IMG/VR virus record: IMGVR_UViG_3300024259_002152
Coordinates: 186,001 to 250,000 of that record
DNA length: 64,000 nt
Direction: 5' to 3' (one strand)
Part shown: in pieces, positions 46,035-64,000 of the stretch
Layout: each line of letters begins with the position of its first letter
Position numbering within the stretch: the stretch's first letter is position 1
Translations under genes and position numbers: made by a program
The notes under the pieces: model-generated
Database searches by the model: none
What the model was told of the DNA's origin: nothing
The model's input: only the letters and a program-made list of their open reading frames with translations

Positions 46035-48548
46035 GTGAATAAAGATTTTATCTTATCGGTTTTGAAGAAAGTGAGATTTTTGTTTCCTTTCGTGGTGGAC
46101 TCACCTCATGAGGTTCTTGGGGAGTTGGCGCAAATAATTCCATCTCGATATATGATATTTCCTTGTGATATTATAGATCTTAGACAGTTTATTAGAGAGG
46201 ATAAGATTTCATCTTCGAATCCTATACTGTTTTTTTCTCAAAAATTTGCAGATAAATATTTGAAAGAATATTCAGTGTTTTTAGTTCTTGACTCTCATGT
46301 AGATGTTGTGAATGATCTATACGGAGGTGTTCAAGTTAATTATTGCGATGAACTCCCTTTGTCTCATCTACTTGTTAGAATCCTTATTAACGAACCATCT
46401 GCAAATAACTCTTTCGATGTTGTTAAAAACTTAATGGAAGAATTTAATTTAGGGGTAGAATGTTTGGTATCAAATAGTGTTCCTGGTATTTCTGGTCCTA
46501 GCAAAAAATTGTCATATATAATAGAACCTAAAAAGGCACAAAGAACTATAGGTGTTCCTTCAGACCTCCCTCTTACTCCAAAAGAAAACGATATATTTGA
46601 GTTCTTGAGACAAGTTAAAAAAGATTACAATCTTGATATTCAAATGAGGGTGGCAGGAGGATGGGTCAGAGATAAGATTCTTGGTAAAGAAAGTGATGAT
46701 ATAGATATAGCTGTAGATATGCCAGGTTATGATTTTGCTAAATTGGTGGCCCAAGCTGCCTTTAAGAGCAATATATCTCATGACCCTAAAGCGTATAATG
46801 TTAGTTTAGACAAAGATGCAGACCCAGCCACGAGAGTTGATGATGACAATCTGATGGTAGGGGCTGTAGATTTATTTGGTCAGAAAATAGAATTTGTTCC
46901 AATGAGAACAGAGCACTATCCTGATCCTCAAAGCAGAAAACCTAAAATTACCACAACGAATGATCCAAGAGAAGATGTGAAAAGAAGAGATCTTACAATC
47001 AATTCTATTTATTATAATATAGATACTGGTCAAGTAGATGATTTTGTAGGAGGAGTAGAGGATTTAGGTTTGGAAAGCGGAAAAATGATATTAAGAACAC
47101 CAGATGATGCCAAAAAAACTTATGAAGAAGATCCATTAAGGTTGCTGAGAGCTTTGCGCTTTCATAGTCGTTATCCCAATAGCGAATTAGATCCAGATAT
47201 AATCAAATCAATGTCAGACCCAGACATACAAGAATCTTATGTCAAGAAAGTTGCTGCGTCAAGAGCTGGACCTGAGATAATGAAAATGTTAGTGGGGGAT
47301 AATCCTACTGCATCTTTAAAACTATTATTTGAGAGCGGTTTATATAGGAAAGTTTTTGATGTTCCTGCAATGGGGAATATTAATCCTGATGGTATAGAGA
47401 TGGATCAAAAATCTCCTTATCACAAATATAGTTTATTAGATCATACGATAGAAGTGGTGTCTAATCTTAATAGTATTATGAAAGAGAATGAAGAGCCCGA
47501 TGATATGAGAGGACTTATGAATCTTGCTGCTGTTTTTCATGATTTCGGAAAAATGGATAACAAAGTTGCAAGACCTCATAAACGTCCAAGAGTTCCTGGA
47601 CATACTACTTATGTTGGGCACGAAAGAAGCTCAGAAGATATGGCAGAAGCCATATTGAAATCTATTAACGTGCCAAAAGAAAAAAGAAATTTAGTTAATA
47701 CTGTTATTAAAACACATATGTATCCTCATGATGCTTCGGATTGGAGTAGTAAAAATAAAGGTCCAGGTAATTTTATTGAAAAATTAAAAATAAAAGGCAA
47801 AGGTGGAGTAGATGATTTGTGGAAGTATGTGTTTTATCATGGTCAAGCTGATGCCATGTCGTCTAATCCTGAGACATATGATGAGCAAAAATATAATCAA
47901 GGAAAAGAGTGGTTTGAGCAATATCGTTCTGAACCATCGACAGAATTTACCAGATTTCAAGGAACGTTAATAGATGGTAACGTAGTGGATAATCTCAGGC
48001 AGCAAATAGAGCAGCAGAGACAAGTTCGTATCAGAAAAAACATTATCAGTGATGCTTTACATTTTATTTTACAACAGCAATATACAGGTAATATTGATAT
48101 GTCTTTTGCTTCATTGCCAGAAGGAGCAGATAGAGAGAAAGCTATGAATAAGTCTATTAATGATGCTACTAATAAAGTCAAAGGGTGGATGCTTAATGTG
48201 CATAATAAATATTTAGAACCACCTAAGGGAGGACAGGTTATGGGGTCTAATTGGTTTAAAAAAGTAAAAACTGCACAAGTAGCTGCTCTATCAGGAGATG
48301 TGCAAACTCAAGATCCAGAGATAAAGAAAGGTCCAAAAGAAGCTCTTCCAAAATATCAAGTTGGTATGAAGGTAAGAGATAGAAGAAATTCTGTATCTCA
48401 ACAACAGACCTATGGGGTGGTAGAAGCAATAAAAGGTAATAAAATGAAGATAGTTTGGAATCCTGATAGTAAAGAAAAAAGACAAGAAGAAGTTGTCGAT
48501 ATGGTGGAAAATACTGAAATTTTATCTTTAATTGTTGCGGAGGTATAA
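46035..48548 (+). CDS. cca: Class II CCA tRNA nucleotidyltransferase with HD domain and N- and C-terminal extensions
   Basis: RVAGGWVRD...DDIDIA, EFVPMRTE, DVKRRDLTINS, EDPLRLLRALRF, LLDHT, FHDFGK, YVGHE. Confidence 0.9.
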   Translation: MNKDFILSVLKKVRFLFPFVVDSPHEVLGELAQIIPSRYMIFPCDIIDLRQFIREDKISSSNPILFFSQKFADKYLKEYSVFLVLDSHVDVVNDLYGGVQVNYCDELPLSHLLVRILINEPSANNSFDVVKNLMEEFNLGVECLVSNSVPGISGPSKKLSYIIEPKKAQRTIGVPSDLPLTPKENDIFEFLRQVKKDYNLDIQMRVAGGWVRDKILGKESDDIDIAVDMPGYDFAKLVAQAAFKSNISHDPKAYNVSLDKDADPATRVDDDNLMVGAVDLFGQKIEFVPMRTEHYPDPQSRKPKITTTNDPREDVKRRDLTINSIYYNIDTGQVDDFVGGVEDLGLESGKMILRTPDDAKKTYEEDPLRLLRALRFHSRYPNSELDPDIIKSMSDPDIQESYVKKVAASRAGPEIMKMLVGDNPTASLKLLFESGLYRKVFDVPAMGNINPDGIEMDQKSPYHKYSLLDHTIEVVSNLNSIMKENEEPDDMRGLMNLAAVFHDFGKMDNKVARPHKRPRVPGHTTYVGHERSSEDMAEAILKSINVPKEKRNLVNTVIKTHMYPHDASDWSSKNKGPGNFIEKLKIKGKGGVDDLWKYVFYHGQADAMSSNPETYDEQKYNQGKEWFEQYRSEPSTEFTRFQGTLIDGNVVDNLRQQIEQQRQVRIRKNIISDALHFILQQQYTGNIDMSFASLPEGADREKAMNKSINDATNKVKGWMLNVHNKYLEPPKGGQVMGSNWFKKVKTAQVAALSGDVQTQDPEIKKGPKEALPKYQVGMKVRDRRNSVSQQQTYGVVEAIKGNKMKIVWNPDSKEKRQEEVVDMVENTEILSLIVAEV

Positions 48549-48549
48549 A

Positions 48550-49440
48550 ATGTTACAGGTTGGTTATGGAGGTTATTATTTGGTAGGGGGCAACGTAACA
48601 GAATATGTCGATTCTCCGACATATTATGAGCCTGGTTTTAATGTTATGTACCCAATAGAAATAGCCGCTCCTAAGTCAGATCGTTTTTTCATTCTTATCA
48701 GGAAAAGAGAAGATGAGTCGGGAGATGGTTTTGCCAATTTGGTTGCTACAAATGTTTCAGCGACAGCAGTTGACGCCACTAATGGAGAAAGTCTATTAGT
48801 AAGGACTTCTAATAACACTTTACATCCCGCTTGGAATCAAGATCCATCTTCTACTACTCCTGTTCTCCTACAGATAGATAATCAGTTGGACATGGTTAAT
48901 ACTATTTTAAGAGTAAGAGTAATTGATTGTAAAGTGAAAGATTCGACAGATAATAGTTTTATCAATTTTAGAGTGATTATAGAAGAAGATCCTGAAGATT
49001 TATATTTCAATTATATTCCTGTGCATAGGAGAATATATCCCGATAGAAATACTTTTAGTATTGCTGGTAGGTCAGCATATGTAACATTAAGAAATGATAG
49101 CGATGCTTATTTATTAGTGTCCCCCTATGCTTGGTTAAAGGAAGACACAAAGGATAAGTCAGATTTTTCTTATCCTCAAGATACATTTTATTATCAAATA
49201 GAGAATACTTACAATAGCGAAGACTTTACATTTGCATTATCAAGTTATAGTGATTCTTTTGTGGCTGAACATGTGTCTGTGTTAAATGTCCCAGGGAACA
49301 AAAAAGTAGCTCTTATTTTAATAGATAATGCTATTTATGATTATATATTTCAGTTGAGAAGTGGCGTAAGTTTAGTAATATCTGTTGTGGGAGAACTTAG
49401 TGGTATAGAAGATACGTTTACGGTCAACCTTAATGTATAG
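48550..49440 (+). CDS. Beta-rich hypothetical protein (possibly structural)
   Basis: GGAGG SD before ATG 48550; aromatic, Asn/Thr-rich composition. Confidence 0.55.
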   Translation: MLQVGYGGYYLVGGNVTEYVDSPTYYEPGFNVMYPIEIAAPKSDRFFILIRKREDESGDGFANLVATNVSATAVDATNGESLLVRTSNNTLHPAWNQDPSSTTPVLLQIDNQLDMVNTILRVRVIDCKVKDSTDNSFINFRVIIEEDPEDLYFNYIPVHRRIYPDRNTFSIAGRSAYVTLRNDSDAYLLVSPYAWLKEDTKDKSDFSYPQDTFYYQIENTYNSEDFTFALSSYSDSFVAEHVSVLNVPGNKKVALILIDNAIYDYIFQLRSGVSLVISVVGELSGIEDTFTVNLNV

Positions 49441-49449
49441 GAGCGGGTA

Positions 49450-49962
49450 ATGGGATGGTTTAAAGAGTCACAAAATGAAAATTTTATAGAAAAAGTAAAG
49501 GATATTTTAAAAAAACATTCTTTCACTAACGCAATATCTAACTACTATCATATTCCCATTAGTGAAGTCGATACTCATCTAGAAATAGAGGTGTGTGATC
49601 TTCATGGGAAATTTGCAGAAGGAAATGGTAAATTAATAAGAATAGATAAAAAGTTGTTAGATAATGACTTCTTTGATGAAAATTTTCACTTTGTGATCCA
49701 CGAATTTTTCCATTGGTTGAAGAGAAGGTCAGAAAATAAATTTTACTTCAACGATCCAGAAGAAGTCCAAAGTTTTGTTTTGCAGATGGCTTGGAATTTG
49801 ATAAATGGGAAAAGCGAAGAAGAAGTAACTAGAAAGATTTATCCCATCATTAAGGCTCATTTTAAAGATCAAAATAAATTTGAAGATGTATTTACAGAAA
49901 TGTTAAATAAAGCAATTAATCTCTATCAGATTTATCAGAGAGGGGGAGAATTTTCGATTTAA
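49450..49962 (+). CDS. Putative zincin metallopeptidase with N-terminal MGWFKESQ motif
   Basis: VIHEFFHW (HExxH) with downstream DPEEVQSF. Confidence 0.65.
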   Translation: MGWFKESQNENFIEKVKDILKKHSFTNAISNYYHIPISEVDTHLEIEVCDLHGKFAEGNGKLIRIDKKLLDNDFFDENFHFVIHEFFHWLKRRSENKFYFNDPEEVQSFVLQMAWNLINGKSEEEVTRKIYPIIKAHFKDQNKFEDVFTEMLNKAINLYQIYQRGGEFSI

Positions 49963-49992
49963 ATATAAATAGATATTTTTTACGGAGATATT

Positions 49993-50709
49993 ATGAAAAG
50001 AATAAAAGTAACGCATTTTTTGCAAGATCCTGCACTTTGTGCAGTAGCCGCAGTCGCTGTTGTAGCAAATTTTTATAATCCAGAGATAACTTATGAGCAT
50101 GTGAAGAAAGTGGCTCATAGAAAAATTAGTAAAAAAATATCCGATGATGGACTATATTCTTCTCAAATATGTATGCTCCTTAATCTTCTAGGATTTCAGA
50201 ATGTATCTTTAGTTACTAGTGATTTTTCATGTATAGATTATTCCTGGTGTGATTATGGAAAAAGAAAGATGAAAGAAGTCCTAGAACAATCAATTTATAC
50301 TAAAAAAGAGAAAGAAGAGAGAGCTTTAACCAAAAATCTTTATAAATGGTATACGTTACAAGGTTATAACAATAGTATTAAAATTGATTATAATTTTGGC
50401 AGGTATATTAGAAAGCAATTAAATAAAAGAAAGCCTCTCATTTTGTCTTTTAATTGGACTATGTTTTTTAAGTTTGCTAAAGAGGGAGAAGTCGGACCAG
50501 ATCCAATAAATGGGGAGTCTGAGGAGCATGCTGTAGTTGCGAATGGTTATGATAAAAATGGAGTATGGGTAGTGGACTCTCATCATAATTACTACACCTA
50601 TAATAGGAAAAAGTATAGAAGAGGTTTTTACAAGATATCTTGGGAAAATTTATTCACTATTATGGGTGAGGGAGATGTGATTATTCCTAATGATTATTAT
50701 ATTGAATAA
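49993..50709 (+). CDS. C39-like (papain-fold) cysteine peptidase
   Basis: HFLQDPALCAVAA (Gln/Cys), KPLIL, EHAVVANGYD...VVDS (His/Asp). Confidence 0.78.
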   Translation: MKRIKVTHFLQDPALCAVAAVAVVANFYNPEITYEHVKKVAHRKISKKISDDGLYSSQICMLLNLLGFQNVSLVTSDFSCIDYSWCDYGKRKMKEVLEQSIYTKKEKEERALTKNLYKWYTLQGYNNSIKIDYNFGRYIRKQLNKRKPLILSFNWTMFFKFAKEGEVGPDPINGESEEHAVVANGYDKNGVWVVDSHHNYYTYNRKKYRRGFYKISWENLFTIMGEGDVIIPNDYYIE

Positions 50710-57019: not shown

Positions 57020-57385
57020 ATGGAGTATCAAACAATGACGTTTAAAAATATATGTAAAAATTATTTTGATAGGAATAAAAAATATCTGCTATCAGATCAC
57101 ATTATTTACGAGATGAATGGGGCTGTGTTATGTAAGACAAGCAATGCTATTTTTGATTTTCATGAAATAGCAATAAAAAATATTATAGATTATTGCAAAG
57201 AGGCAGGATATGAAAAAATAGATAAAGTAGTTTTTGTTTCTTCTTATGATGTAGATATTGTTGAAGATGCTCCCAAATTACAACTAAAAATGCAAGCTGA
57301 TTCTAAAATAAGTATAATAAAAGAAAATGACAGATTTATAGCAATGGTTTGTATTGGAGAATGGGTGGAGATTAATGAAAAATAA
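57020..57385 (+). CDS. Hypothetical protein
   Basis: 121-aa ORF. Confidence 0.55.
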   Translation: MEYQTMTFKNICKNYFDRNKKYLLSDHIIYEMNGAVLCKTSNAIFDFHEIAIKNIIDYCKEAGYEKIDKVVFVSSYDVDIVEDAPKLQLKMQADSKISIIKENDRFIAMVCIGEWVEINEK

Positions 57386-59459
57386 TATAAAACAGAGTAT
57401 ATTCTTAGTGGGTTTTTTAATCATTTTTATTTCTTTTGTGCTGTCATGGAGGGTATTGACTTATAAAAAACTAGAAAATACTATTGTATTGAATACTCAA
57501 GAGAGGCTAGTGACTGTCGTTGAATCGGAATCAGTAATTATCAGTCAATTGATAAATAATTATTTTGTAGAGGACGATTGGTTGGCATTTATGAATGATT
57601 TCAATGGGAGAACGGGAAAAATAGGAAAAGATGGATATATGTGGATAATAGATGATAAGGGAATAGTAAAATATCATCCATATCAACAATACATCGGTAA
57701 AAGTGCAATTATTTTAAGAAGGAATATATTGGATGATGGAGGTTGTAAGAATTTTGAAGATATTATTGGTAGAATGAAAAGAGGAGAAAAAGGATATGGA
57801 GATTATACATCTATTTGGAGCAATAAAGATCAAAAAAAAGTGAAAAAAATAGTAGCATTTTGCCCTCTTGAAGTAAATAAAAACAAATGGTCGATTGCTG
57901 TTTCTATTGGTTATGTGGAGATCTCGTCTCCTATAGTCATAAATAAATATATGGATATTTTCGGCGTAATTGTTATATTTATTTTTACTTGTATTGTGGG
58001 TTATATTTTTTATAAGAAACAAAAGAAAATAGATGAAACAAGTATATTTGTTCAAACAGAACACGAGTTAAGGGAAAGTAAAGATTTTATAAGAAGAGTT
58101 ATTGATACTATTCCTCTTTTAGTTTTTGTAAAAGATTATGAGGGACATTACATATTAGCTAATCAAACATTGGCAGACATGCTAGGCGTAACAGTAGAAA
58201 AAATAGAGGGGAAAAAAGACATCGATTTCATGGGTAGCACTGAGGTTGAGGAAGCAAATCGGTATACAGATGCAGATAAAAAAGTCATTACAACTCAGGA
58301 AGAGATGCATATTTATGAAGAAAAATCTACGGACTCTAAGGGCAATATCGTATATTTTAACACAATAAAATATCCTTTAACTATTGGGGAGAAATCTGAT
58401 TACGTTCTAGGAGTATCTACTAATATCACAGAAAGAAAAATGGCAGAAGAGAAAATAGAGTCTTTGGCAAAATTTCCAGGAGAAAATAGCAATCCAGTGT
58501 TGAGAATAGATCATGATGGCAAACTTATTTATGCTAATAATGCTAGTGAAGCTTTATTAGAACTATGGGGTAGTAACGTGGGAGGATATGTGCCATCATC
58601 TTTTACTCATATAATAAAAGAGTGTTTGTTAGAGCATATAGTAAAAACTAAAGATATAAAAATTAATGGTAATATTTTGACATTGAGTTTCACTCCTATC
58701 CGTGATGATTATATTAATATTTATGGATCAGATATCACAGACATAAAAGCAGCAGAAGAAGAATTGAGAAAAGCAAACGAGGGGTTAGAGGAATTTGCTT
58801 ATATTACTTCTCATGATTTACAAGAACCATTAAGAACTGTTTTTGCATATTCTCAGTTATTGAAAAATTCTTGTTACGATAGATTGAGTGAAGAAGAACA
58901 AAAATTTCTTAACTATTTAATGAGCGGCAGCCAACGGATGAAGATACTTGTAAAAGAGTTGCTTGATTACTCAAGAGTTGGGAAAAGTCGAGATGCATCA
59001 GGAATTGAAAGAGTGAATATAGGGATGTTATTGGATGAGATCTTTGAAGACTCTCAAGTATATATTAAAGAAACAAATGCTATTATTACTGTTCAAAAAC
59101 ATATGCCTACAATTATTGGTTCTCGTTTGAGAATAAAACAGTTATTTCATAATCTAATTAGTAATGCATTGAAATTTAGAGGACAACAACAACCTATCAT
59201 AAAAATAGGTTATCGCGAGTTAGATGATGCAAATTATTGGGAGTTTTATGTTGAAGATAATGGGATAGGAATTGATCCTCAATTTCATGATCGTATTTTT
59301 GGTATTTTTAAAAGGTTGTATTCTAGAGAAGAATATCCTGGAACAGGTATAGGATTAGCTTTGTGTAAAAAGATTGTAGAAACTCATGCAGGTGATATAT
59401 GGGTAGAGTCTGAAGCGAATAAAGGGACTATAATCTATTTTACAATTGCTAAATCATAA
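57375..59459 (+). CDS. Membrane sensor histidine kinase (TM-Cache-TM-PAS-PAS-HisKA-HATPase)
   Basis: Two hydrophobic segments; GYMWIIDDKGIVKYHP; EEFAYITSHDLQEPLR; NLISNALKF; DNGIGID; GTGIGLALCKKIV. Confidence 0.92.
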   Translation: MKNNIKQSIFLVGFLIIFISFVLSWRVLTYKKLENTIVLNTQERLVTVVESESVIISQLINNYFVEDDWLAFMNDFNGRTGKIGKDGYMWIIDDKGIVKYHPYQQYIGKSAIILRRNILDDGGCKNFEDIIGRMKRGEKGYGDYTSIWSNKDQKKVKKIVAFCPLEVNKNKWSIAVSIGYVEISSPIVINKYMDIFGVIVIFIFTCIVGYIFYKKQKKIDETSIFVQTEHELRESKDFIRRVIDTIPLLVFVKDYEGHYILANQTLADMLGVTVEKIEGKKDIDFMGSTEVEEANRYTDADKKVITTQEEMHIYEEKSTDSKGNIVYFNTIKYPLTIGEKSDYVLGVSTNITERKMAEEKIESLAKFPGENSNPVLRIDHDGKLIYANNASEALLELWGSNVGGYVPSSFTHIIKECLLEHIVKTKDIKINGNILTLSFTPIRDDYINIYGSDITDIKAAEEELRKANEGLEEFAYITSHDLQEPLRTVFAYSQLLKNSCYDRLSEEEQKFLNYLMSGSQRMKILVKELLDYSRVGKSRDASGIERVNIGMLLDEIFEDSQVYIKETNAIITVQKHMPTIIGSRLRIKQLFHNLISNALKFRGQQQPIIKIGYRELDDANYWEFYVEDNGIGIDPQFHDRIFGIFKRLYSREEYPGTGIGLALCKKIVETHAGDIWVESEANKGTIIYFTIAKS

Positions 59460-59509
59460 GGGTATTATATGTAATAACTTATAGTAAATAAAGTTTATTA
59501 TTTTTTATG

Positions 59510-59537
59510 TTGAAAAGTGAAAGTGTAGTGGTATAAT
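59510..59537 (+). promoter_or_regulatory. Sigma70-type promoter, motif copy 5
   Basis: TTGAAA-AGTGAAAGTGTAGTGG-TATAAT with an AT-rich upstream tract. Confidence 0.78.
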
Positions 59538-59572
59538 ATTTTTATTAAAGTATTTTGCTGTTGTTTGTCGAA

Positions 59573-59625
59573 TAGTAAGATAGTTAGTTTAGTTTAGTCT
59601 AGTTTAGTTTAGTAAGGAGTTACAA
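59573..59625 (+). repeat. (T)TTAG tandem-repeat leader running into the SD
   Basis: TAG TTAG TTTAG TTTAG TCTAG TTTAG TTTAG TAAGGAGTTACAA-ATG. Confidence 0.9.
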
Positions 59626-60243
59626 ATGAAAAAAAACAAGGCGGAATTAGTGTTTATTGTGGACCGTTCCGGCTCCATGATGTCAATTGCTTCTGATATG
59701 CAGGGAGCAATCAAGTCAGTTCTATCAGACCAAAAGAAAAACCTCAAAGGTGATATAAATGTGACCTTTGTACGTTTTGACTCTGAATACGAGGAAGTAT
59801 TCAGTGGTCGATCTATCAATGATGTTTCTGAAACGGATTTAGAAATTAATCCAAGAGGAATGACATCTTTGTTGGATGCAATGGGAAAAACTCTTAATAC
59901 TTTTGAAAGAAGATTTTCTGAAACAGATGAGAAGAATAGGCCTAAGAGGGTTTTATTCCTTATTATTACTGATGGACAAGAAAATAATAGCAAAGAGTAT
60001 TCGAGAGATAAAGTTTTTGGCATGATTAAAACTTTGGAAAGAGATCACGAATGGGGATTTACTTTTATTGGTGCTAACCAAGATGCTATTTCTGAAGGTA
60101 GTAGTATTGGTGTAGCAAGAGGAAAATCTCTTAATTATGCAGCTTCGACGAAGGGAGTTAGGTGTATGGCACGATCTGTTAGTAATTTTACAGCAGATTA
60201 TCTTGAGAGTGGTGATGCAAGTTACTCTGACGGTGATGAGTAA
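59626..60243 (+). CDS. von Willebrand factor A domain protein
   Basis: VDRSGSM (DxSxS MIDAS), PRGMTSLLDA, ITDGQENNSKEY, FTFIGANQDA. Confidence 0.9.
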   Translation: MKKNKAELVFIVDRSGSMMSIASDMQGAIKSVLSDQKKNLKGDINVTFVRFDSEYEEVFSGRSINDVSETDLEINPRGMTSLLDAMGKTLNTFERRFSETDEKNRPKRVLFLIITDGQENNSKEYSRDKVFGMIKTLERDHEWGFTFIGANQDAISEGSSIGVARGKSLNYAASTKGVRCMARSVSNFTADYLESGDASYSDGDE

Positions 60244-60245
60244 TT

Positions 60246-60283
60246 TTTAGTTTAGTTTAGTTTAGTTTAGTAAGGAGTTACAA
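60246..60283 (+). repeat. (TTTAG)5 leader plus identical TAAGGAGTTACAA SD block
   Basis: Shares 29 bp AGTTTAGTTTAGTAAGGAGTTACAAATGA with 59601-59629. Confidence 0.9.
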
Positions 60284-61153
60284 ATGAGTTATGATCAGAA
60301 AATCCAGTCCGCTCGTAAAGTCATTGACGAGCATAATGCAAATGCTGACAATCAAATCAATTTTGAGGAATTTACCAAAAAGCTTATTAATTTGGGAGGT
60401 TCTTCAGAAGAATCTCTAAAAGCAGTGAGTTGGGAAGATTTACAAGATTGTGGACTTCCTAAAATTATTGCTAGGAGATTAACATTTCTCTTCAGGCAAG
60501 ATTCCGACAATGAGGGAGGTAAATCTACTTATGTCTCTGAAAAGAAAGTTGGAACACTTTCTTATAGGGAGTTAGTAGAACGCTACAATCCAAAAGATGT
60601 TAAAAATCCTGTGGGCAAAAGATTAAAAGATCTTTCGGATAACAAGAAGTTTATTGTTTTCGATGATAATAGTAAAGTTATTATTGATGAAACAATAAGG
60701 TTGCTGGAAGATATTGTTAATGGGTTGCCTGAAGTAGAAACGGCTTTTGTGAATAAAAGACCTCTTCAAACCTATAGCGTTGGAGAGCGTCCTGATTTTT
60801 ATGCAGAAGAAAATCCGATTTATCCTGGGAGAGCATTACGTTCTAATGAAACGTGCGATCAAACAGGGCGTTCTTGGCAAGGGGTTTCTATAGAAATCCG
60901 TCAATTACTATATTTGGCTATTGACACAGATGAATTTGTCATTTCGTCTGTATCGGATGCTCACGATATCTTAGATAAAGTTTTATCAAAAGAGTGCTCT
61001 TTTGATAGGTTGAGAGGAAGATATCCTGAAGCATCTAAGGCTTTTGATGAGGCTAGTAAAATCGGGACACTTCCTCTTCTGAAAATCAAAATAGGGGATC
61101 ACGGAAGTGCAGAAAAAGGTAATAATCCTTTTGGTAGGAACACTATCTATTAA
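60284..61153 (+). CDS. Hypothetical protein, possible SAM/HhH-like helical motif
   Basis: SWEDLQDCGLPKIIARRL. Confidence 0.55.
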   Translation: MSYDQKIQSARKVIDEHNANADNQINFEEFTKKLINLGGSSEESLKAVSWEDLQDCGLPKIIARRLTFLFRQDSDNEGGKSTYVSEKKVGTLSYRELVERYNPKDVKNPVGKRLKDLSDNKKFIVFDDNSKVIIDETIRLLEDIVNGLPEVETAFVNKRPLQTYSVGERPDFYAEENPIYPGRALRSNETCDQTGRSWQGVSIEIRQLLYLAIDTDEFVISSVSDAHDILDKVLSKECSFDRLRGRYPEASKAFDEASKIGTLPLLKIKIGDHGSAEKGNNPFGRNTIY

Positions 61154-61164
61154 TATTAATTATG

Positions 61165-61195
61165 GGTGGGCAGCTTAGGTTGCCCACCTTTATTT
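61165..61195 (+). terminator. Intrinsic terminator-like hairpin with TTAG loop
   Basis: GGTGGGCAGC-[TTAG]-GTTGCCCACC-TTTATTT. Confidence 0.7.
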
Positions 61196-61207
61196 AGGAG
61201 ATATAAT

Positions 61208-62467
61208 ATGTCACAAGAAATGTCAGTAAAACAAGATTTAAAATGTATTTTTAATATGCCTGAGCAATTAAATAGCTCGTTTGATAGAGATCAAGAGGAA
61301 TTTCATAGTCTACCTCCTCATGCTCCCGTAGATGTTTATCCTGTAGATGAATATGAAAGTTGCCCCGCAAATTGGACACATGGTTCTGATGTGGCAAGTA
61401 GTTATTTTGTTGGAGTAAAAGAAAAACATGGCATGTGGTTAGATTTTAATGAGTGTTTTTATCATACTCATGATGTCGCGATTGTTATTTCAATTCAAGG
61501 TATTAATCCAATAACAGGACAAAAGATGGTAGCAGAAAAAGCTCTAAAGTTGGAGCAATATCATAAAAAATGTCCTATTCATAATGTTGATTATAAACAA
61601 GATAGATATTGTGAGAAGTGTGGGTTCAAATGGCCAGGACAAAATTATCTTGCCACCACAGGAACACCTGAAATGATGTTGTGGTTAGATGGTTTTAGAA
61701 CTCCAGAAGGAACAGTAAGGCAATACATTTTTACAGAAGATGAAATCAGGGGAGTGGCTTCTCAATTAATTGGTAAAGAAAGAGTATTTGCCATAGGTAT
61801 TGCTTATTATCTGAGTAAAAATAAAAAACCTTATACCCTACAACGTCCTGAAGAAAGAGTATTTACAGATAGTTATGCAGGACGTAAGTTTTTTAGTCCT
61901 ATGCATACCTCGGGGAATTGGAGTAAGGCTGCTCGCATCGGTGCGAGTGGATGTGATTCTAAGTCCTCGGGTTCTGATATAAAGATGGAGGCACTTGATC
62001 TATCTGATGAAATATCCATGCTTTTTGATGATTCTCCGAGTTATACAGAATCTTTAGGTGTAGATGATTCTGATATGATGATAGGAGCTTCAGATAATGA
62101 TGATTTATCGACCAACGGATTATTGAAGGGGATAATTACCCCTGATGCGGGAGATGATGGAGATAGAGCTACGGTTTGTACTGTGAACGGTTCGGCAATG
62201 CCTTCTTCCTCTACTCCTACTTCGAGTTCTGCTTTGAGACAAAGAAAGTCCATTACTCCTGTCAAGCAATTAGAGATAGGCGCAGGAGCATTAATACAAC
62301 AACGTGTTTATGATGATCCTAAGGTATTGACTTATTGGGAAGAAAAACCTGCTGGTATGATTTATATCAATTACTGCGATGAAGAAACAAAGAAACGAAT
62401 TTTAGATGCTGGTAGAAGAGCAGATGAAAAAGACGGATTTATGCAGGATATTAAAGTAGGTGGATGA
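61208..62467 (+). CDS. Conserved-looking hypothetical protein with a low-complexity middle
   Basis: GMWLDF...QGINPITG, WLDGFRTPEGTVRQY, IGAGALIQQRVYDD...W; AGGAG SD before ATG 61208. Confidence 0.6.
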   Translation: MSQEMSVKQDLKCIFNMPEQLNSSFDRDQEEFHSLPPHAPVDVYPVDEYESCPANWTHGSDVASSYFVGVKEKHGMWLDFNECFYHTHDVAIVISIQGINPITGQKMVAEKALKLEQYHKKCPIHNVDYKQDRYCEKCGFKWPGQNYLATTGTPEMMLWLDGFRTPEGTVRQYIFTEDEIRGVASQLIGKERVFAIGIAYYLSKNKKPYTLQRPEERVFTDSYAGRKFFSPMHTSGNWSKAARIGASGCDSKSSGSDIKMEALDLSDEISMLFDDSPSYTESLGVDDSDMMIGASDNDDLSTNGLLKGIITPDAGDDGDRATVCTVNGSAMPSSSTPTSSSALRQRKSITPVKQLEIGAGALIQQRVYDDPKVLTYWEEKPAGMIYINYCDEETKKRILDAGRRADEKDGFMQDIKVGG

Positions 62468-62494
62468 TAGGGCTCAATAGAGAGAGCAGGACAT

Positions 62495-62537
62495 AAAGGG
62501 ACTATTTTTTACATAATGTGGGAATAGTCCCTTTTAT
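62495..62537. terminator. Bidirectional terminator between convergent genes
   Basis: AAAGGGACTATT (62495-62506) / AATAGTCCCTTT (62523-62534). Confidence 0.72.
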
Positions 62538-62947
62538 ATTGATACAGATTTTAAAGTTGCAAAAGTTAAAGCTCTTGAGAGATCTTTTGTTTGTATTTCA
62601 TCTTTGATAAGATAGTCTTTGATACCTAGTAGCCATGCTTTTCTACCAACGGAGTAATCTTCTAATCCTGTTAAGACAATAACTGGTGTGTTCTGGTTGT
62701 GTTTTTCTAGGTGCTCTAATGTAGTTTCTACTGTTTCTATCCCATCTGTTTCGGGCAATCCTAAGTCAAGGATGATAGCATCGAAAGTAGTCGAGGCCAT
62801 TTTTTTAAGTCCATCTTGTAGGCAATTTGATTCATCACAAACCATTACTCTTCCGTTCATTTGTTTAAGATGATTAATGATTAGATCTCTATCTTCTTTA
62901 CTGTCATCTATTATTAATATCTTCATTTTACTCAATGTCCTTTCCAT
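62534..62947 (-). CDS. Stand-alone response regulator receiver domain
   Basis: ILIIDDSKED, ILDLGLPETDG, PVIVLTG, DYLIK. Confidence 0.88.
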   Translation of the reverse strand: MERTLSKMKILIIDDSKEDRDLIINHLKQMNGRVMVCDESNCLQDGLKKMASTTFDAIILDLGLPETDGIETVETTLEHLEKHNQNTPVIVLTGLEDYSVGRKAWLLGIKDYLIKDEIQTKDLSRALTFATLKSVSI

Positions 62948-63398
62948 CTATAAAGCAAAAATTGTTATTATTGGGCAATTCATTTGATTTAAACCAATAC
63001 TTTCCTATAAGACCAACTTTATCATATAACTCTTGAATATCAAAAGTTTTAGTGATATATGAGTTGGCATGTAATTTGTATGTTTCTTCTATGTCAGGAG
63101 GAAAATCAGAAGTGGTGAATATAATAACTGGTATTACTTTATAGGCGTCATCAGTTTTAATAATTTTTAATATTTCTTTGCCATTAATATTTGGTATATT
63201 TATATCTAAAATAATGATATGGGGAGTTGGAGCAGACTCAAAGTTGCCTTTTTTATAGAGAAAATTTAAAGCATCGCTTCCATTACTAATATTTATCACA
63301 TCTAATGAAAGATTTGGGATCTTAGATAGAGCTTGTCTAAGTAGCTCAAAATCGGCTTCATTATCCTCTATAGATAATATTGTAAATCTCTTAGCCAT
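62928..63398 (-). CDS. Stand-alone Rcp1-type response regulator
   Basis: IEDNEAD, ILDINIPNINGKEIL, IPVIIFTTS...DIEETYKLHANSYITK. Confidence 0.92.
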   Translation of the reverse strand: MAKRFTILSIEDNEADFELLRQALSKIPNLSLDVINISNGSDALNFLYKKGNFESAPTPHIIILDINIPNINGKEILKIIKTDDAYKVIPVIIFTTSDFPPDIEETYKLHANSYITKTFDIQELYDKVGLIGKYWFKSNELPNNNNFCFIDGKDIE

Positions 63399-63539: not shown

Positions 63540-64000
63540 ATGAATAAAGGTAATATTCCTGTGATAAATATTAGTGGAAAAACCATCCCTGAGGCTTGGG
63601 AAAAGGCTGTTTTGGCTGTTTGGGAGAGTGGTTCGAAAGTGAAAACCCAATATGATAAACCAGAAGATCCCCCAAGTTGTGACGCTACGGTTATTGTGAC
63701 AGTGGAGAATCCTTTTGCTGAGCCAAGAATTCATAAGAATTTTCCTGGGGGCCCAGAGGAGTTAGAATCTTATAGACAAGAGGTTGTAGAGGGCATACAT
63801 GATCATTGGATTAATCCTGAGGAGAAAAAATGGACTTATACATATCATGAGAGATTATTTAGATATACTCCTTGTGAAGATTTAAGTAAATCTGATTCTC
63901 CTCGTCCTTTTATACCTATTGACCAGATACAATATATCATAGATTATATGGCTAAATCAGGCTATACAAGACGAGCACAAGCCATTACGTGGCAGCCTAC
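63540..64000 (+). CDS. thyA: Thymidylate synthase family protein (5' part; runs off the window; not in ORF track)
   Basis: Hand translation MNKGNIPVINISGKTIPEAWEKAV...WTYTYHERLF...IDQIQYII...TRRAQAITWQP; AAGGAG SD. Confidence 0.8.
   Translation, partial: MNKGNIPVINISGKTIPEAWEKAVLAVWESGSKVKTQYDKPEDPPSCDATVIVTVENPFAEPRIHKNFPGGPEELESYRQEVVEGIHDHWINPEEKKWTYTYHERLFRYTPCEDLSKSDSPRPFIPIDQIQYIIDYMAKSGYTRRAQAITWQP

What the first reader, a model, noticed from the sequence alone, without database searches (positions are those of the whole stretch)
57375..63398. Complete two-component signalling set on a probable phage, split around an inserted operon
Seen: an intact membrane Cache/PAS/PAS kinase (+) and two stand-alone receivers (-) with all phospho-site residues converge on the vWA operon. 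Established: the SHDLQEPLR-type kinase, Rcp1-type receiver and DLGLP-type receiver are typically consecutive in bacteria, the last usually fused to an output domain. Here it ends right after helix 5 (LSRALTFA). Inference: a captured and trimmed module with no DNA-binding output, which could sense an extracytoplasmic ligand and act by protein contact or by draining host phosphorelays.
Basis: partly seen in the sequence, partly recalled or inferred. Interest (0 to 1): 0.6.

Follow-up and report, generated by a model that had tools for sequence, protein, structure and literature searches.

The report
Two-component sensor system kept by huge phages
A family of very large seawater phages has long carried, under purifying selection, its own bacterial-style sensor kinase plus two small receiver proteins with no DNA-binding part, which suggests that the phage itself senses conditions during infection.

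Summary
Window 57375-59459 (+) encodes an intact sensor histidine kinase: two membrane helices around an sCache_2 domain, then PAS, a PAS-like stretch, HisKA and HATPase_c. Window 62534-63398 (-) encodes two stand-alone receivers with complete phospho-acceptor pockets. A vWA gene and two unknown genes (X, Y) lie between them.

The contig is a 351-kb IMG/VR virus record (CheckV 73% complete) from seawater. No capsid or terminase gene was found, so the phage call rests on indirect evidence.

The "captured, trimmed, split by an inserted operon" reading is mostly wrong:
- The same layout (pre, kinase, [variable slot], X, Y, two receivers on the opposite strand, thymidylate synthase) recurs in at least eight related huge-phage contigs (2.8-548 kb).
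- All module genes co-diverge (46-76% identity) with dN/dS about 0.1-0.35.
- X-Y(-vWA) is older phage backbone and occurs without the kinase and receivers in more distant relatives.
- The second receiver is stand-alone in every orthologue. A relative that CheckV rates 100% complete has one kinase, two receivers and no regulator with an output domain.
- The kinase core is conserved, but its sensor end differs between lineages. Only this phage among those sampled has the Cache/membrane version.

Function is inferred: phage-run phosphosignalling acting through protein contacts. No paper in the searched library describes this.

The parts
57020..57385 (+). 'pre': 121-aa backbone gene overlapping the kinase start. 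It is not specific to the signalling set.
   Evidence: It precedes the kinase in every relative. No Pfam, PHROG or NCBIfam hit. The profile search gave 88 representatives, nearly all 100-130 aa. In the distant relative L113 it is followed by RtcB, not a kinase.
57375..59459 (+). Sensor histidine kinase, 694 aa: TM1, sCache_2, TM2, PAS, PAS-like, HisKA (His480, codon 58812-58814), HATPase_c.
   Evidence: Pfam; hydropathy; motifs. The closest solved cores are 8f71 and bacteriophytochrome kinase modules. The identical protein is on 7 public contigs.
57618..57923 (+). sCache_2 domain, predicted extracytoplasmic, flanked by membrane helices at about 57384-57464 and 57930-58016.
   Evidence: PF17200 at 33.9 bits against a cut-off of 25. 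Kyte-Doolittle 19-residue means above 1.8 at residues 4-30 and 186-214. None of the orthologous kinases examined has it.
58788..59447 (+). Conserved catalytic core (HisKA + HATPase_c), shared with all phage orthologues.
   Evidence: 46-60% identity to orthologues; H-box and N/G1/F/G2 boxes invariant. The phage kinases form one clade.
59510..59537 (+). Promoter-like site (TTGAAA, 16 nt, TATAAT, with TG) ahead of vWA.
   Evidence: 11 of 12 matches. The total count in the region does not exceed shuffles, so this is only a lead.
59626..60243 (+). vWA protein, 205 aa, with a DxSxS MIDAS motif. Phage family phrog_7371. Optional between relatives.
   Evidence: Pfam VWA 35.2 bits; phrog_7371 184 bits. 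Present at this position in some relatives and absent in L021, L022 and L023.
60284..61153 (+). X: 289-aa conserved huge-phage protein of unknown function. Its N-terminal 79 residues form an HhH/SAM-like helical bundle.
   Evidence: 112 homologues at 35-76% identity on contigs up to 548 kb. One homologue is in LR756511.1, an uncultured phage of 595 kb. Model pLDDT 83. VIA Z 5-7.2 for residues 1-79 only.
61164..61189 (+). Terminator-like hairpin between X and Y.
   Evidence: 11-bp stem with 7 GC pairs, followed by a T-run.
61208..62467 (+). Y: 419-aa conserved huge-phage protein. It is a beta-rich fold built from residues 1-225 and 345-410, with a CPxH...CxxC site and a disordered insert at 232-339.
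   Evidence: More than 426 homologues; one is fused to vWA (P0345). Invariant C122, C135, C138 and near-invariant H125. Model. No solved fold match.
62495..62534 (.). 12-bp inverted repeat between the convergent Y and REC2 genes, resembling a bidirectional terminator.
   Evidence: Sequence. Folding gives -19.6 and -16.5 kcal/mol, z -4.9 and -5.2, with no shuffle as stable.
62534..62926 (-). REC2: stand-alone receiver, 130 aa (137 aa from the upstream ATG at 62947). D7 D8 D54 T86 K108.
   Evidence: Response_reg 61.5 bits. Orthologue alignment and invariant columns. Start 1 nt after the REC1 stop.
62928..63398 (-). REC1: stand-alone Rcp1-type receiver, 156 aa. E11 D12 D65 T96 K117.
   Evidence: Response_reg 66.4 bits. 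PDB RcpA/Rcp1/RcpB at E 1e-24 to 2e-26. Invariant columns.
63540..63998 (+). Start of thymidylate synthase (ThyA), the conserved right-hand neighbour of the module. It runs off the window.
   Evidence: PF00303 on the full gene. ThyX replaces it at the same position in some relatives.

Best explanation
This is a working two-component signalling set that belongs to a lineage of huge phages from seawater and other metagenomes. It is not a recent fragment of host DNA.

Evolution: an ancestor of the clade acquired one histidine kinase of the bacteriophytochrome/Cph1-like core type, plus an Rcp1-type and a second single-domain receiver. The set has been inherited vertically since then. The kinase sits in a variable slot between the backbone genes 'pre' and X. 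The receiver pair sits on the opposite strand between Y and the thymidylate synthase gene. The kinase core and both receivers are held constant, while the sensor end of the kinase is exchanged between lineages: none, one PAS, two PAS, or here a membrane-anchored extracytoplasmic sCache_2 plus two PAS.

Inferred mechanism: during infection the kinase is inserted into the host inner membrane. It binds a small extracellular ligand through Cache, with PAS adding cytoplasmic input, and autophosphorylates His480. It then passes the phosphoryl group to Asp65 of REC1 and/or Asp54 of REC2. Neither receiver has an output domain, so they would act by phosphorylation-dependent protein contacts on phage or host targets. 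One of them may instead serve as a phosphate sink that shapes the response.

Shown: the genes, domains, catalytic residues, conservation, co-divergence and purifying selection. Inferred: expression, phosphotransfer, the ligand and the targets.
For: Domains and residues:
- Pfam domains and all catalytic and phospho-acceptor residues are intact.
- Membrane topology fits an extracytoplasmic Cache domain.
- REC1 is Rcp1/RcpA/RcpB-type, and the kinase core is closest to bacteriophytochrome kinase modules.

Conservation:
- The same gene order occurs in eight further related contigs: a 7.9-kb Logan contig, L021 (85 kb), a JGI contig (227 kb), L022/L028 (548 kb, CheckV 100%), L023 (387 kb), L027 (298 kb), L029 (219 kb) and L111.
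- Identity to L021/L022/L023 is similar across module genes: kinase core 60/47/46%, X 76/60/55%, Y 72/54/46%, REC2 76/61/55%, REC1 76/56/53%.
- dN/dS is 0.1-0.35 with dS at or above 1.
- The phage kinases form one clade. Its sister P0044 also lies on a pre-kinase-X contig.
- Each of four virus records holds exactly one HisKA kinase, two classical stand-alone receivers and one cREC.
- The sensor ends vary from 250 to 694 aa.

Viral nature:
- IMG/VR record with a CheckV estimate.
- 428 of 459 ORFs lie on one strand, and there is a 31-tRNA array. A tmRNA is present.
- PHROG hits to a minor tail protein, weakly to a tape measure, and to HNH and LAGLIDADG endonucleases.
- X has a homologue in the GenBank uncultured phage LR756511.1, which carries a Terminase_6N gene.
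Against: - No capsid, portal, sheath or terminase gene was recognised in this record. Terminase_6N was also not found in the 548-kb relative.
- There is no RNA evidence. All 24 runs that hold the stretch are DNA.
- Phosphotransfer is untested.
- These phages are broadly collinear, so conserved neighbourhood does not by itself show that the kinase, the receivers and X/Y/vWA work together.
- The kinase and the receivers are about 3 kb apart, on opposite strands and under separate control. That is unusual for cognate pairs.
- The closest cellular relatives are only 39% (REC2) to 48% (kinase core) identical and scattered over phyla, so the origin is unresolved.
Confidence: 0.7

Rival explanations
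1. One reading: a host two-component cassette was captured, its last receiver lost an output domain, and a vWA operon later inserted into the cassette and split it.
For: Cellular genomes do carry kinase -> Rcp1-like receiver -> REC2-like receiver on one strand (L033, L070). In the pattern-selected sample, 52 of 68 cellular REC2-like proteins are longer than 165 aa. The REC1-then-REC2 order on their own strand matches the cellular order.
Against: X-Y(-vWA) occurs without kinase or receivers in more distant relatives, so it predates the set. vWA is optional within the clade. REC2 is stand-alone in all orthologues and in the L033 and L034 cellular examples. The kinase occupies a slot that holds other genes in relatives (RtcB, ADP-ribosylglycohydrolase). 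That pattern fits insertion of the signalling genes around the backbone, not the reverse.
Confidence: 0.1
2. Host takeover by cross-talk. The phage kinase phosphorylates or dephosphorylates host response regulators. The phage receivers act as decoy sinks that drain host kinases or phosphorelays, and do not form a closed phage pathway.
For: No output domain exists anywhere in the phage genomes. The kinase and the receivers are separately transcribed on opposite strands. Single-domain receivers acting as sinks are established in bacteria (own knowledge: CheY sinks in Sinorhizobium).
Against: The kinase core and both receivers co-diverge at similar rates across the clade, as expected for partners that must keep matching each other. 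Hosts probably differ across such divergence. Nothing here measures specificity.
Confidence: 0.2
3. The signalling set specifically controls the flanked vWA-X-Y proteins. In this model the phosphorylated receivers bind X, Y or vWA.
For: The kinase and receivers bracket X-Y in every carrier. The receivers converge on the operon across a shared hairpin. Y and vWA are fused in one homologue, so these proteins work together. X has a possible HhH/SAM-like interaction or DNA-binding domain.
Against: X-Y(-vWA) functions without the set in other phages. Variable genes separate the kinase from X. Whole-region collinearity (Peptidase_C39_2 upstream, Thy and RNA ligase downstream) can explain the adjacency. 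No fold or family hint links X or Y to receivers.
Confidence: 0.15
4. The contig is not a phage but a cellular or plasmid-like element, for example a reduced symbiont or a giant extrachromosomal element. In that case an ordinary two-component system is unremarkable.
For: No capsid, portal, sheath or terminase was recognised. There are many cell-like genes: polysaccharide synthesis, topoisomerase I, DnaX, a clamp-like protein and a CCA/poly(A) polymerase. One X homologue sits in a MAG labelled Patescibacteria.
Against: IMG/VR and CheckV class it and three relatives as viral, one of them as 100% complete at 548 kb. PHROG tail and homing-endonuclease hits are present. A 10-kb array holds 31 tRNAs and transcription is almost unidirectional. 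Short DnaE-type polymerases like this one are common in phages. X occurs in a GenBank huge phage that has a terminase.
Confidence: 0.08

Closest known systems
Cph1-Rcp1 and bacteriophytochrome-RcpA/RcpB two-component pairs of cyanobacteria and other bacteria
   Same: The kinase core carries the SHDLQEPLR H-box, and its best solved relatives include bacteriophytochrome kinase modules at 119 bits. REC1 is a single-domain Rcp-type receiver: RcpA at E 2e-26 and Rcp1 at 1e-25. Neither has a DNA-binding output.
   Different: There is no PAS-GAF-PHY photosensory module. The input here is sCache_2 plus PAS. The receiver is not co-transcribed with the kinase; it lies 3 kb away on the other strand. A second receiver is present. 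The whole set is encoded by a phage.
Branched bacterial pathways with one kinase and several single-domain response regulators (CheA-CheY1/CheY2, DivJ/PleC-DivK, Spo0F-type relays)
   Same: One kinase and two stand-alone receivers with full phospho-acceptor pockets. The output must go through protein contact or phosphate-sink behaviour.
   Different: No Hpt protein, CheA-type P1 domain or known downstream partner was found. The resemblance is functional and rests on my own knowledge, not on homology beyond the REC fold.
Cellular kinase / Rcp1-like / REC2-like gene trio in Nitrosomonadaceae MAG L033
   Same: The same three components occur, with a stand-alone REC2-like protein of 149 aa.
   Different: All three genes lie on one strand and are contiguous. 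Identity to the phage proteins is low, at 34-36% for REC2. That kinase is not the nearest branch to the phage clade in the core tree.
Kinase-like and receiver-like families already in phage databases (phrog_10912 'kinase', phrog_857, phrog_731, phrog_5982), and kinase-like genes in LR756501 and Microcoleus phage My-WqHQDG
   Same: HisKA/HATPase and REC domains do occur in deposited phage or prophage sequences.
   Different: Those hits cover only the catalytic half at 25-33% identity, and many lie in unannotated or possibly host-contaminated records. None is described as a conserved kinase plus two-receiver set. No paper found reports one.
cREC (cyclic-phosphate processing receiver) of jumbo phages (Iyer et al. 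2021, PMC7824862)
   Same: It is a receiver-fold protein encoded by jumbo phages. This genome also has one, at G000 146,093-146,488.
   Different: cREC is stated never to occur with histidine kinases. REC1 and REC2 are classical Response_reg domains above the Pfam cut-off and sit with a HisKA kinase.

Membership tests
Classical two-component system (histidine kinase + response regulator) | HisKA dimerisation/phosphoacceptor domain with the conserved H-box histidine | tested here: met
   PF00512 at 42.9 bits against a cut-off of 26.9. SHDLQEPLR with His480 is invariant in orthologues.
Classical two-component system (histidine kinase + response regulator) | HATPase_c catalytic domain with N, G1, F and G2 boxes | tested here: met
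   PF02518 at 88.8 bits. NLISNALKF, DNGIGI, IFGIFKR and GTGIGLALCK are present and conserved.
Classical two-component system (histidine kinase + response regulator) | Receiver domain with acidic pair, phospho-acceptor Asp, Thr/Ser and Lys | tested here: met
   REC1 has E11 D12 D65 T96 K117 and REC2 has D7 D8 D54 T86 K108, all invariant. Both exceed the PF00072 cut-off.
Classical two-component system (histidine kinase + response regulator) | Phosphotransfer from the kinase to the receiver | not testable with these tools
   This needs biochemistry. The single complex prediction gave no verdict and is not used as evidence.
Classical two-component system (histidine kinase + response regulator) | Response regulator with an effector/output domain (typical, not obligatory) | tested here: not met
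   The only classical REC hits in G000, G001 (100% complete), G002 and G003 are two open frames of 137-160 aa each.
Phytochrome-type pair (Cph1/Rcp1, BphP/RcpA) | Rcp-type single-domain receiver | tested here: met
   The best PDB matches are RcpA, Rcp1 and RcpB at E 2e-26 to 3e-24, well above CheY.
Phytochrome-type pair (Cph1/Rcp1, BphP/RcpA) | PAS-GAF-PHY photosensory module on the kinase | tested here: not met
   Pfam finds sCache_2 and PAS only, with no GAF or PHY. The PDB matches to bacteriophytochromes cover residues 442-693 only.
Phytochrome-type pair (Cph1/Rcp1, BphP/RcpA) | Kinase and receiver adjacent in one operon | tested here: not met
   They are 3 kb apart, on opposite strands, and separated by three genes and a hairpin.
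Cache-domain transmembrane sensor kinase | Cache domain between two membrane helices (extracytoplasmic) | tested here: met
   PF17200 at 33.9 bits against a cut-off of 25, residues 82-183. Hydrophobic segments at residues 4-30 and 186-214. The topology is predicted, not shown.
Tailed huge phage (Caudoviricetes, over 200 kb) | Major capsid protein, portal and large terminase | tested here: inconclusive
   No Pfam Terminase_6N/6C, Phage_capsid or sheath hit in G000. 39 large ORFs scanned against PHROGs gave none. The record is only 73% complete and the clade is very divergent.
Tailed huge phage (Caudoviricetes, over 200 kb) | Other phage signatures and classification as viral | tested here: met
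   IMG/VR record with a CheckV estimate. phrog_290 minor tail protein at E 8e-22, and HNH and LAGLIDADG endonucleases. 31 tRNAs, and 93% of ORFs on one strand. A tmRNA is present. Relatives of 219-548 kb are in IMG/VR. X has a homologue in GenBank phage LR756511.1.
TerY-P type vWA / phosphatase / kinase triad (considered for vWA-X-Y) | vWA protein followed by a PP2C phosphatase and a Ser/Thr kinase | tested here: not met
   X and Y have no Pfam, NCBIfam or PHROG domain. Their models match no phosphatase or kinase fold.
cREC (PF20274) | Divergent receiver never linked to histidine kinases | tested here: not met
   REC1 and REC2 match PF00072 above the cut-off. A separate gene elsewhere in the genome is the cREC.

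The most novel reading that the evidence does not exclude
A clade of huge marine phages runs its own environmental sensing. A phage-encoded receptor kinase has an exchangeable sensor end, which in this phage is an extracytoplasmic Cache domain placed in the host membrane. It reads an outside or metabolic cue during infection and, through two phage-encoded single-domain receivers, tunes the infection programme (timing of replication or lysis, or reprogramming of host physiology). That would be a virus-owned two-component pathway, not a borrowed host gene or a decoy.
Probability: 0.35. Interest if true: 0.8.

Novelty: new variant of a known kind. Interest (0 to 1): 0.58.

Why it matters
Known cases of phages reading signals use peptide (arbitrium) or quorum-sensing receptors that are transcription factors. 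A complete histidine-kinase pathway would be a different kind of viral decision circuit. Here such a pathway is kept under purifying selection across phages whose module proteins are only about half identical, and its sensor end is swapped between lineages.

It also offers a compact natural example of signalling through single-domain receivers only, whose targets could be found. Reviews of jumbo phages, including one from 2026, do not mention histidine kinases or response regulators. The finding therefore fills a gap in what huge phages are known to encode.

The work also defines a conserved, uncharacterised huge-phage gene pair, X-Y, often accompanied by a vWA gene, with hundreds of homologues.

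Tried and rejected
- Capsid, terminase and sheath searches. Pfam Terminase_6N, Terminase_6C, Phage_capsid and Phage_sheath_1 gave nothing in the own genome. Terminase_6N was absent in three relatives and present only in LR756511.1. That terminase, used as a protein query, found nothing in G000-G003. PHROG scans of 39 large ORFs gave tail, replication and endonuclease hits but no head or packaging genes.
- Complex prediction of the kinase core (455-694) with REC1: no verdict, score 0.13. It is not evidence either way.
- Function of X and Y. Foldseek against the PDB found nothing at E <= 0.001. VIA-align gave only an HhH/SAM-like N-terminal bundle for X (Z up to 7.2) and at most Z 4.6 for Y. BFVD gave weak matches to uncharacterised viral proteins. 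The TerY-P triad idea was rejected.
- 'pre' as a kinase accessory protein. This was rejected because it occurs without a kinase in L113 and L114. The profilin-like Atlas lead (0.89) is below the level to trust.
- Donor or host. REC2 relatives in 185,579 species genomes are at most 39% identical and spread over many phyla. The kinase tree gives only a polytomy with Bacteroidota MAG kinases (a quick tree, because the careful search did not finish). The context look-up for P0041 failed.
- X alone in IMG/VR found nothing. Y had no match in GenBank phages.
- RNA evidence: no RNA run holds the stretch.
- Records behind L113, L024 and L025 are not held for whole-record searches.

Full report
**1. What is in the window**

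- The kinase (57375-59459, +, 694 aa from the ATG) has sCache_2, PAS_4, HisKA and HATPase_c above the Pfam cut-offs.
- Two strongly hydrophobic segments (residues 4-30 and 186-214) bracket the Cache domain, so that domain is predicted to face outward.
- The H-box reads SHDLQEPLR (His480), and the N, G1, F and G2 boxes are intact.
- Pfam does not call a second PAS. The stretch at about residues 360-455 does align with the PAS domain of orthologous kinases.
- Two receivers lie on the minus strand: REC1 (62928-63398, 156 aa) and REC2.
- REC2 most likely starts at 62926 (130 aa), one base after the REC1 stop, as in its orthologues.
- Both receivers have the full acidic pocket, phospho-acceptor Asp, Thr and Lys.
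- Between kinase and receivers lie a vWA gene with a DxSxS motif and two genes without any family match, here called X (289 aa) and Y (419 aa).
- A stable hairpin (z about -5) sits between the convergent Y and REC2 genes.

**2. What the contig is**

The window is bases 186,001-250,000 of a 350,866-bp IMG/VR virus record, linear, with a CheckV estimate of 73% complete.
- GC is 33%, and 428 of 459 ORFs are on one strand. 31 tRNA genes sit in a 10-kb array. A tmRNA is present.
- PHROG scans found a minor tail protein (E 8e-22), a weak tape-measure match, HNH and LAGLIDADG homing endonucleases, a short DnaE-type polymerase and helicases.
- I did not find a capsid, portal, sheath or terminase gene by Pfam or PHROG profiles. 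The terminase of a distant GenBank relative also found nothing.
- The viral assignment is therefore probable, not proven.
- The stretch occurs in 24 seawater or marine metagenome runs. None is an RNA run.

**3. The module is conserved in a clade of huge phages**

The identical kinase occurs on seven public contigs. Its best non-identical relative is only 54% identical, and it sits in the same gene order.

X has 112 homologues (35-76% identity) and Y more than 426, on contigs of up to 548 and 584 kb. Context look-ups and local profile mapping show the order pre - kinase - [variable slot] - X - Y - REC2(-) - REC1(-) - thymidylate synthase in these relatives:
- L021 (85 kb)
- a JGI contig (227 kb)
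- L022/L028 (548 kb, CheckV 100%)
- L023 (387 kb)
- L027 (298 kb)
- L029 (219 kb)
- a 7.9-kb contig
- in part, L111

More distant relatives carry X-Y and/or vWA but no kinase or receiver nearby: L024, L025, GenBank LR756511.1 and the TARA contig L113. LR756511.1 has none anywhere in its 595 kb.

In L113 the slot after 'pre' holds RtcB and an ADP-ribosylglycohydrolase instead of a kinase.

X-Y(-vWA) and 'pre' are therefore backbone genes, and the signalling genes were added around them.

**4. Selection and inheritance**

Identity of the window's proteins to L021/L022/L023:

| Gene | L021 | L022 | L023 |
|---|---|---|---|
| Kinase core | 60% | 47% | 46% |
| X | 76% | 60% | 55% |
| Y | 72% | 54% | 46% |
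| REC2 | 76% | 61% | 55% |
| REC1 | 76% | 56% | 53% |

- The signalling genes diverge in step with the backbone.
- Nei-Gojobori estimates give dN/dS of 0.1-0.35, with dS saturated at or above 1. This is an upper bound that still shows purifying selection.
- In a quick IQ-TREE of 129 kinase cores, the seven phage kinases form one clade (aLRT 85). Their sister P0044 (99) also lies on a pre-kinase-X contig.
- The next branches are an unresolved set that includes Bacteroidota MAG kinases.
- A single old acquisition is the simplest reading, and no donor can be named.
- REC2 relatives in species genomes reach only 39% identity.

**5. What varies and what does not**

- The kinase core is constant. 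The sensor end ranges from none (250 aa), through one or two PAS domains (372-488 aa), to the Cache-TM-PAS-PAS form seen here.
- Every virus record searched holds exactly one HisKA kinase, two classical stand-alone receivers and one unrelated cREC. This includes the 100%-complete 548-kb genome.
- The lack of an output domain is therefore a stable property of the system, not a truncation in this copy.
- REC2 ends at the same helix-5 motif in all orthologues.

**6. Types**

- REC1 is clearly Rcp1/RcpA/RcpB-like.
- The best solved relatives of the kinase core include bacteriophytochrome kinase modules.
- REC2 is generic.
- In a pattern-selected sample of 68 cellular REC2-like proteins, 16 stand alone and 52 are longer. 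A neighbouring Rcp1-like receiver occurs in only two of the 68 loci, L033 and L070. In L033 the REC2-like protein is also stand-alone.

**7. X, Y and vWA**

- X folds with pLDDT 83. Only its first 79 residues resemble known folds, namely HhH/SAM-like bundles at Z 5-7.2, which is within the range of chance arrangements.
- Y gives a confident beta-rich fold made from its two ends, with a CPxH...CxxC site and a disordered insert. It has no solved counterpart.
- One Y homologue is fused to vWA, which supports a joint function of these proteins.
- vWA belongs to phage family phrog_7371.
- Their function remains unknown. I found nothing that ties them mechanistically to the receivers.

**8. Mechanism, with its status**

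Shown:
- intact catalytic machinery;
- long-term retention under purifying selection;
- a stable one-kinase, two-receiver composition.

Inferred:
- The kinase is made in the infected cell and sits in the membrane.
- It responds to a ligand through Cache and PAS.
- It phosphorylates REC1 and/or REC2, which then act by protein contact or as a sink.

The one complex prediction gave no verdict.

Alternatives that remain open are cross-talk with host pathways and local control of X/Y/vWA.

**9. Literature**

Full-text searches found no paper on classical two-component systems in jumbo or huge phages.
- The comparative survey of 224 jumbo phages reports only the cREC, stated never to accompany histidine kinases.
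- A 2026 review of jumbo phage biology and three marine or aquatic large-phage papers do not mention these terms.
- Kinase- and receiver-like families do exist in PHROGs and in a few deposited phage records, so single genes are not unprecedented.

**10. Verdict**

- The phage context is probable.
- The evolutionary story is corrected: an old, vertically inherited, selected system placed around backbone genes.
- I class it as a new variant of a known kind, of moderate to good interest.

Noticed in passing
G000 264,710-265,057 (locus L012 15211-15558), outside the window: The phage record carries a full-length tmRNA gene (Rfam RF00023, 124.7 bits). ARAGORN did not report it in my script run.
   Followed up: no
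G000 327,905-338,016 (locus L016): An array of 31 tRNA genes within about 10 kb covers most amino acids. One has an odd two-base anticodon call.
   Followed up: no
G000 146,093-146,488 (locus L009 8093-8488): A 131-aa cREC (PF20274, 49.5 bits), the divergent receiver that Iyer et al. 2021 describe in jumbo phages. One copy also appears in each of G001-G003.
   Followed up: partly
window 63540-63998 and the same position in relatives (L021, L022, L023, JGI 227-kb contig): The gene just downstream of the receiver pair is ThyA in some relatives and the unrelated ThyX in others. This is a non-orthologous replacement at a fixed position.
   Followed up: no
window 105-27,500: A long run of sugar and polysaccharide genes and radical-SAM genes: UDP-GlcNAc 2-epimerase, GDP-mannose-dehydratase-like epimerase, a split transketolase, an aldo/keto reductase, B12-binding radical SAM enzymes and glycosyltransferases.
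   Followed up: no
G000 37,800-92,427 (loci L003-L006): About 54 kb of consecutive giant ORFs (1,047-2,221 aa) with almost no PHROG match. They may be structural or fibre genes.
   Followed up: partly
window 46035-50709: An 837-aa CCA-adding/poly(A) polymerase-like protein with an HD domain, followed by a Peptidase_C39_2 protein. Both are conserved upstream of the module in relatives, including the distant L113.
   Followed up: no
L113 4745-5902 and L114 4745-5902 (-): A TnpB/IS605 OrfB (Cas12f-like) gene is inserted just upstream of 'pre' in a TARA Oceans relative.
   Followed up: no
L024 11049-13667: A distant 401-kb relative has an intein-containing ResIII helicase next to its X-Y-vWA genes.
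   Followed up: no
protein P0345 (593 aa, ENA contig): A natural fusion of a Y homologue with a vWA domain (PF13519, PF05762). This is Rosetta-stone evidence that Y and vWA act together.
   Followed up: no
G000 339,106-340,776 (locus L016 14106-15776): A 556-aa protein has only an N-terminal GHKL ATPase signature (HATPase_c_3, about 24 bits, just below the Pfam cut-off) and no HisKA. It is not a second sensor kinase.
   Followed up: partly
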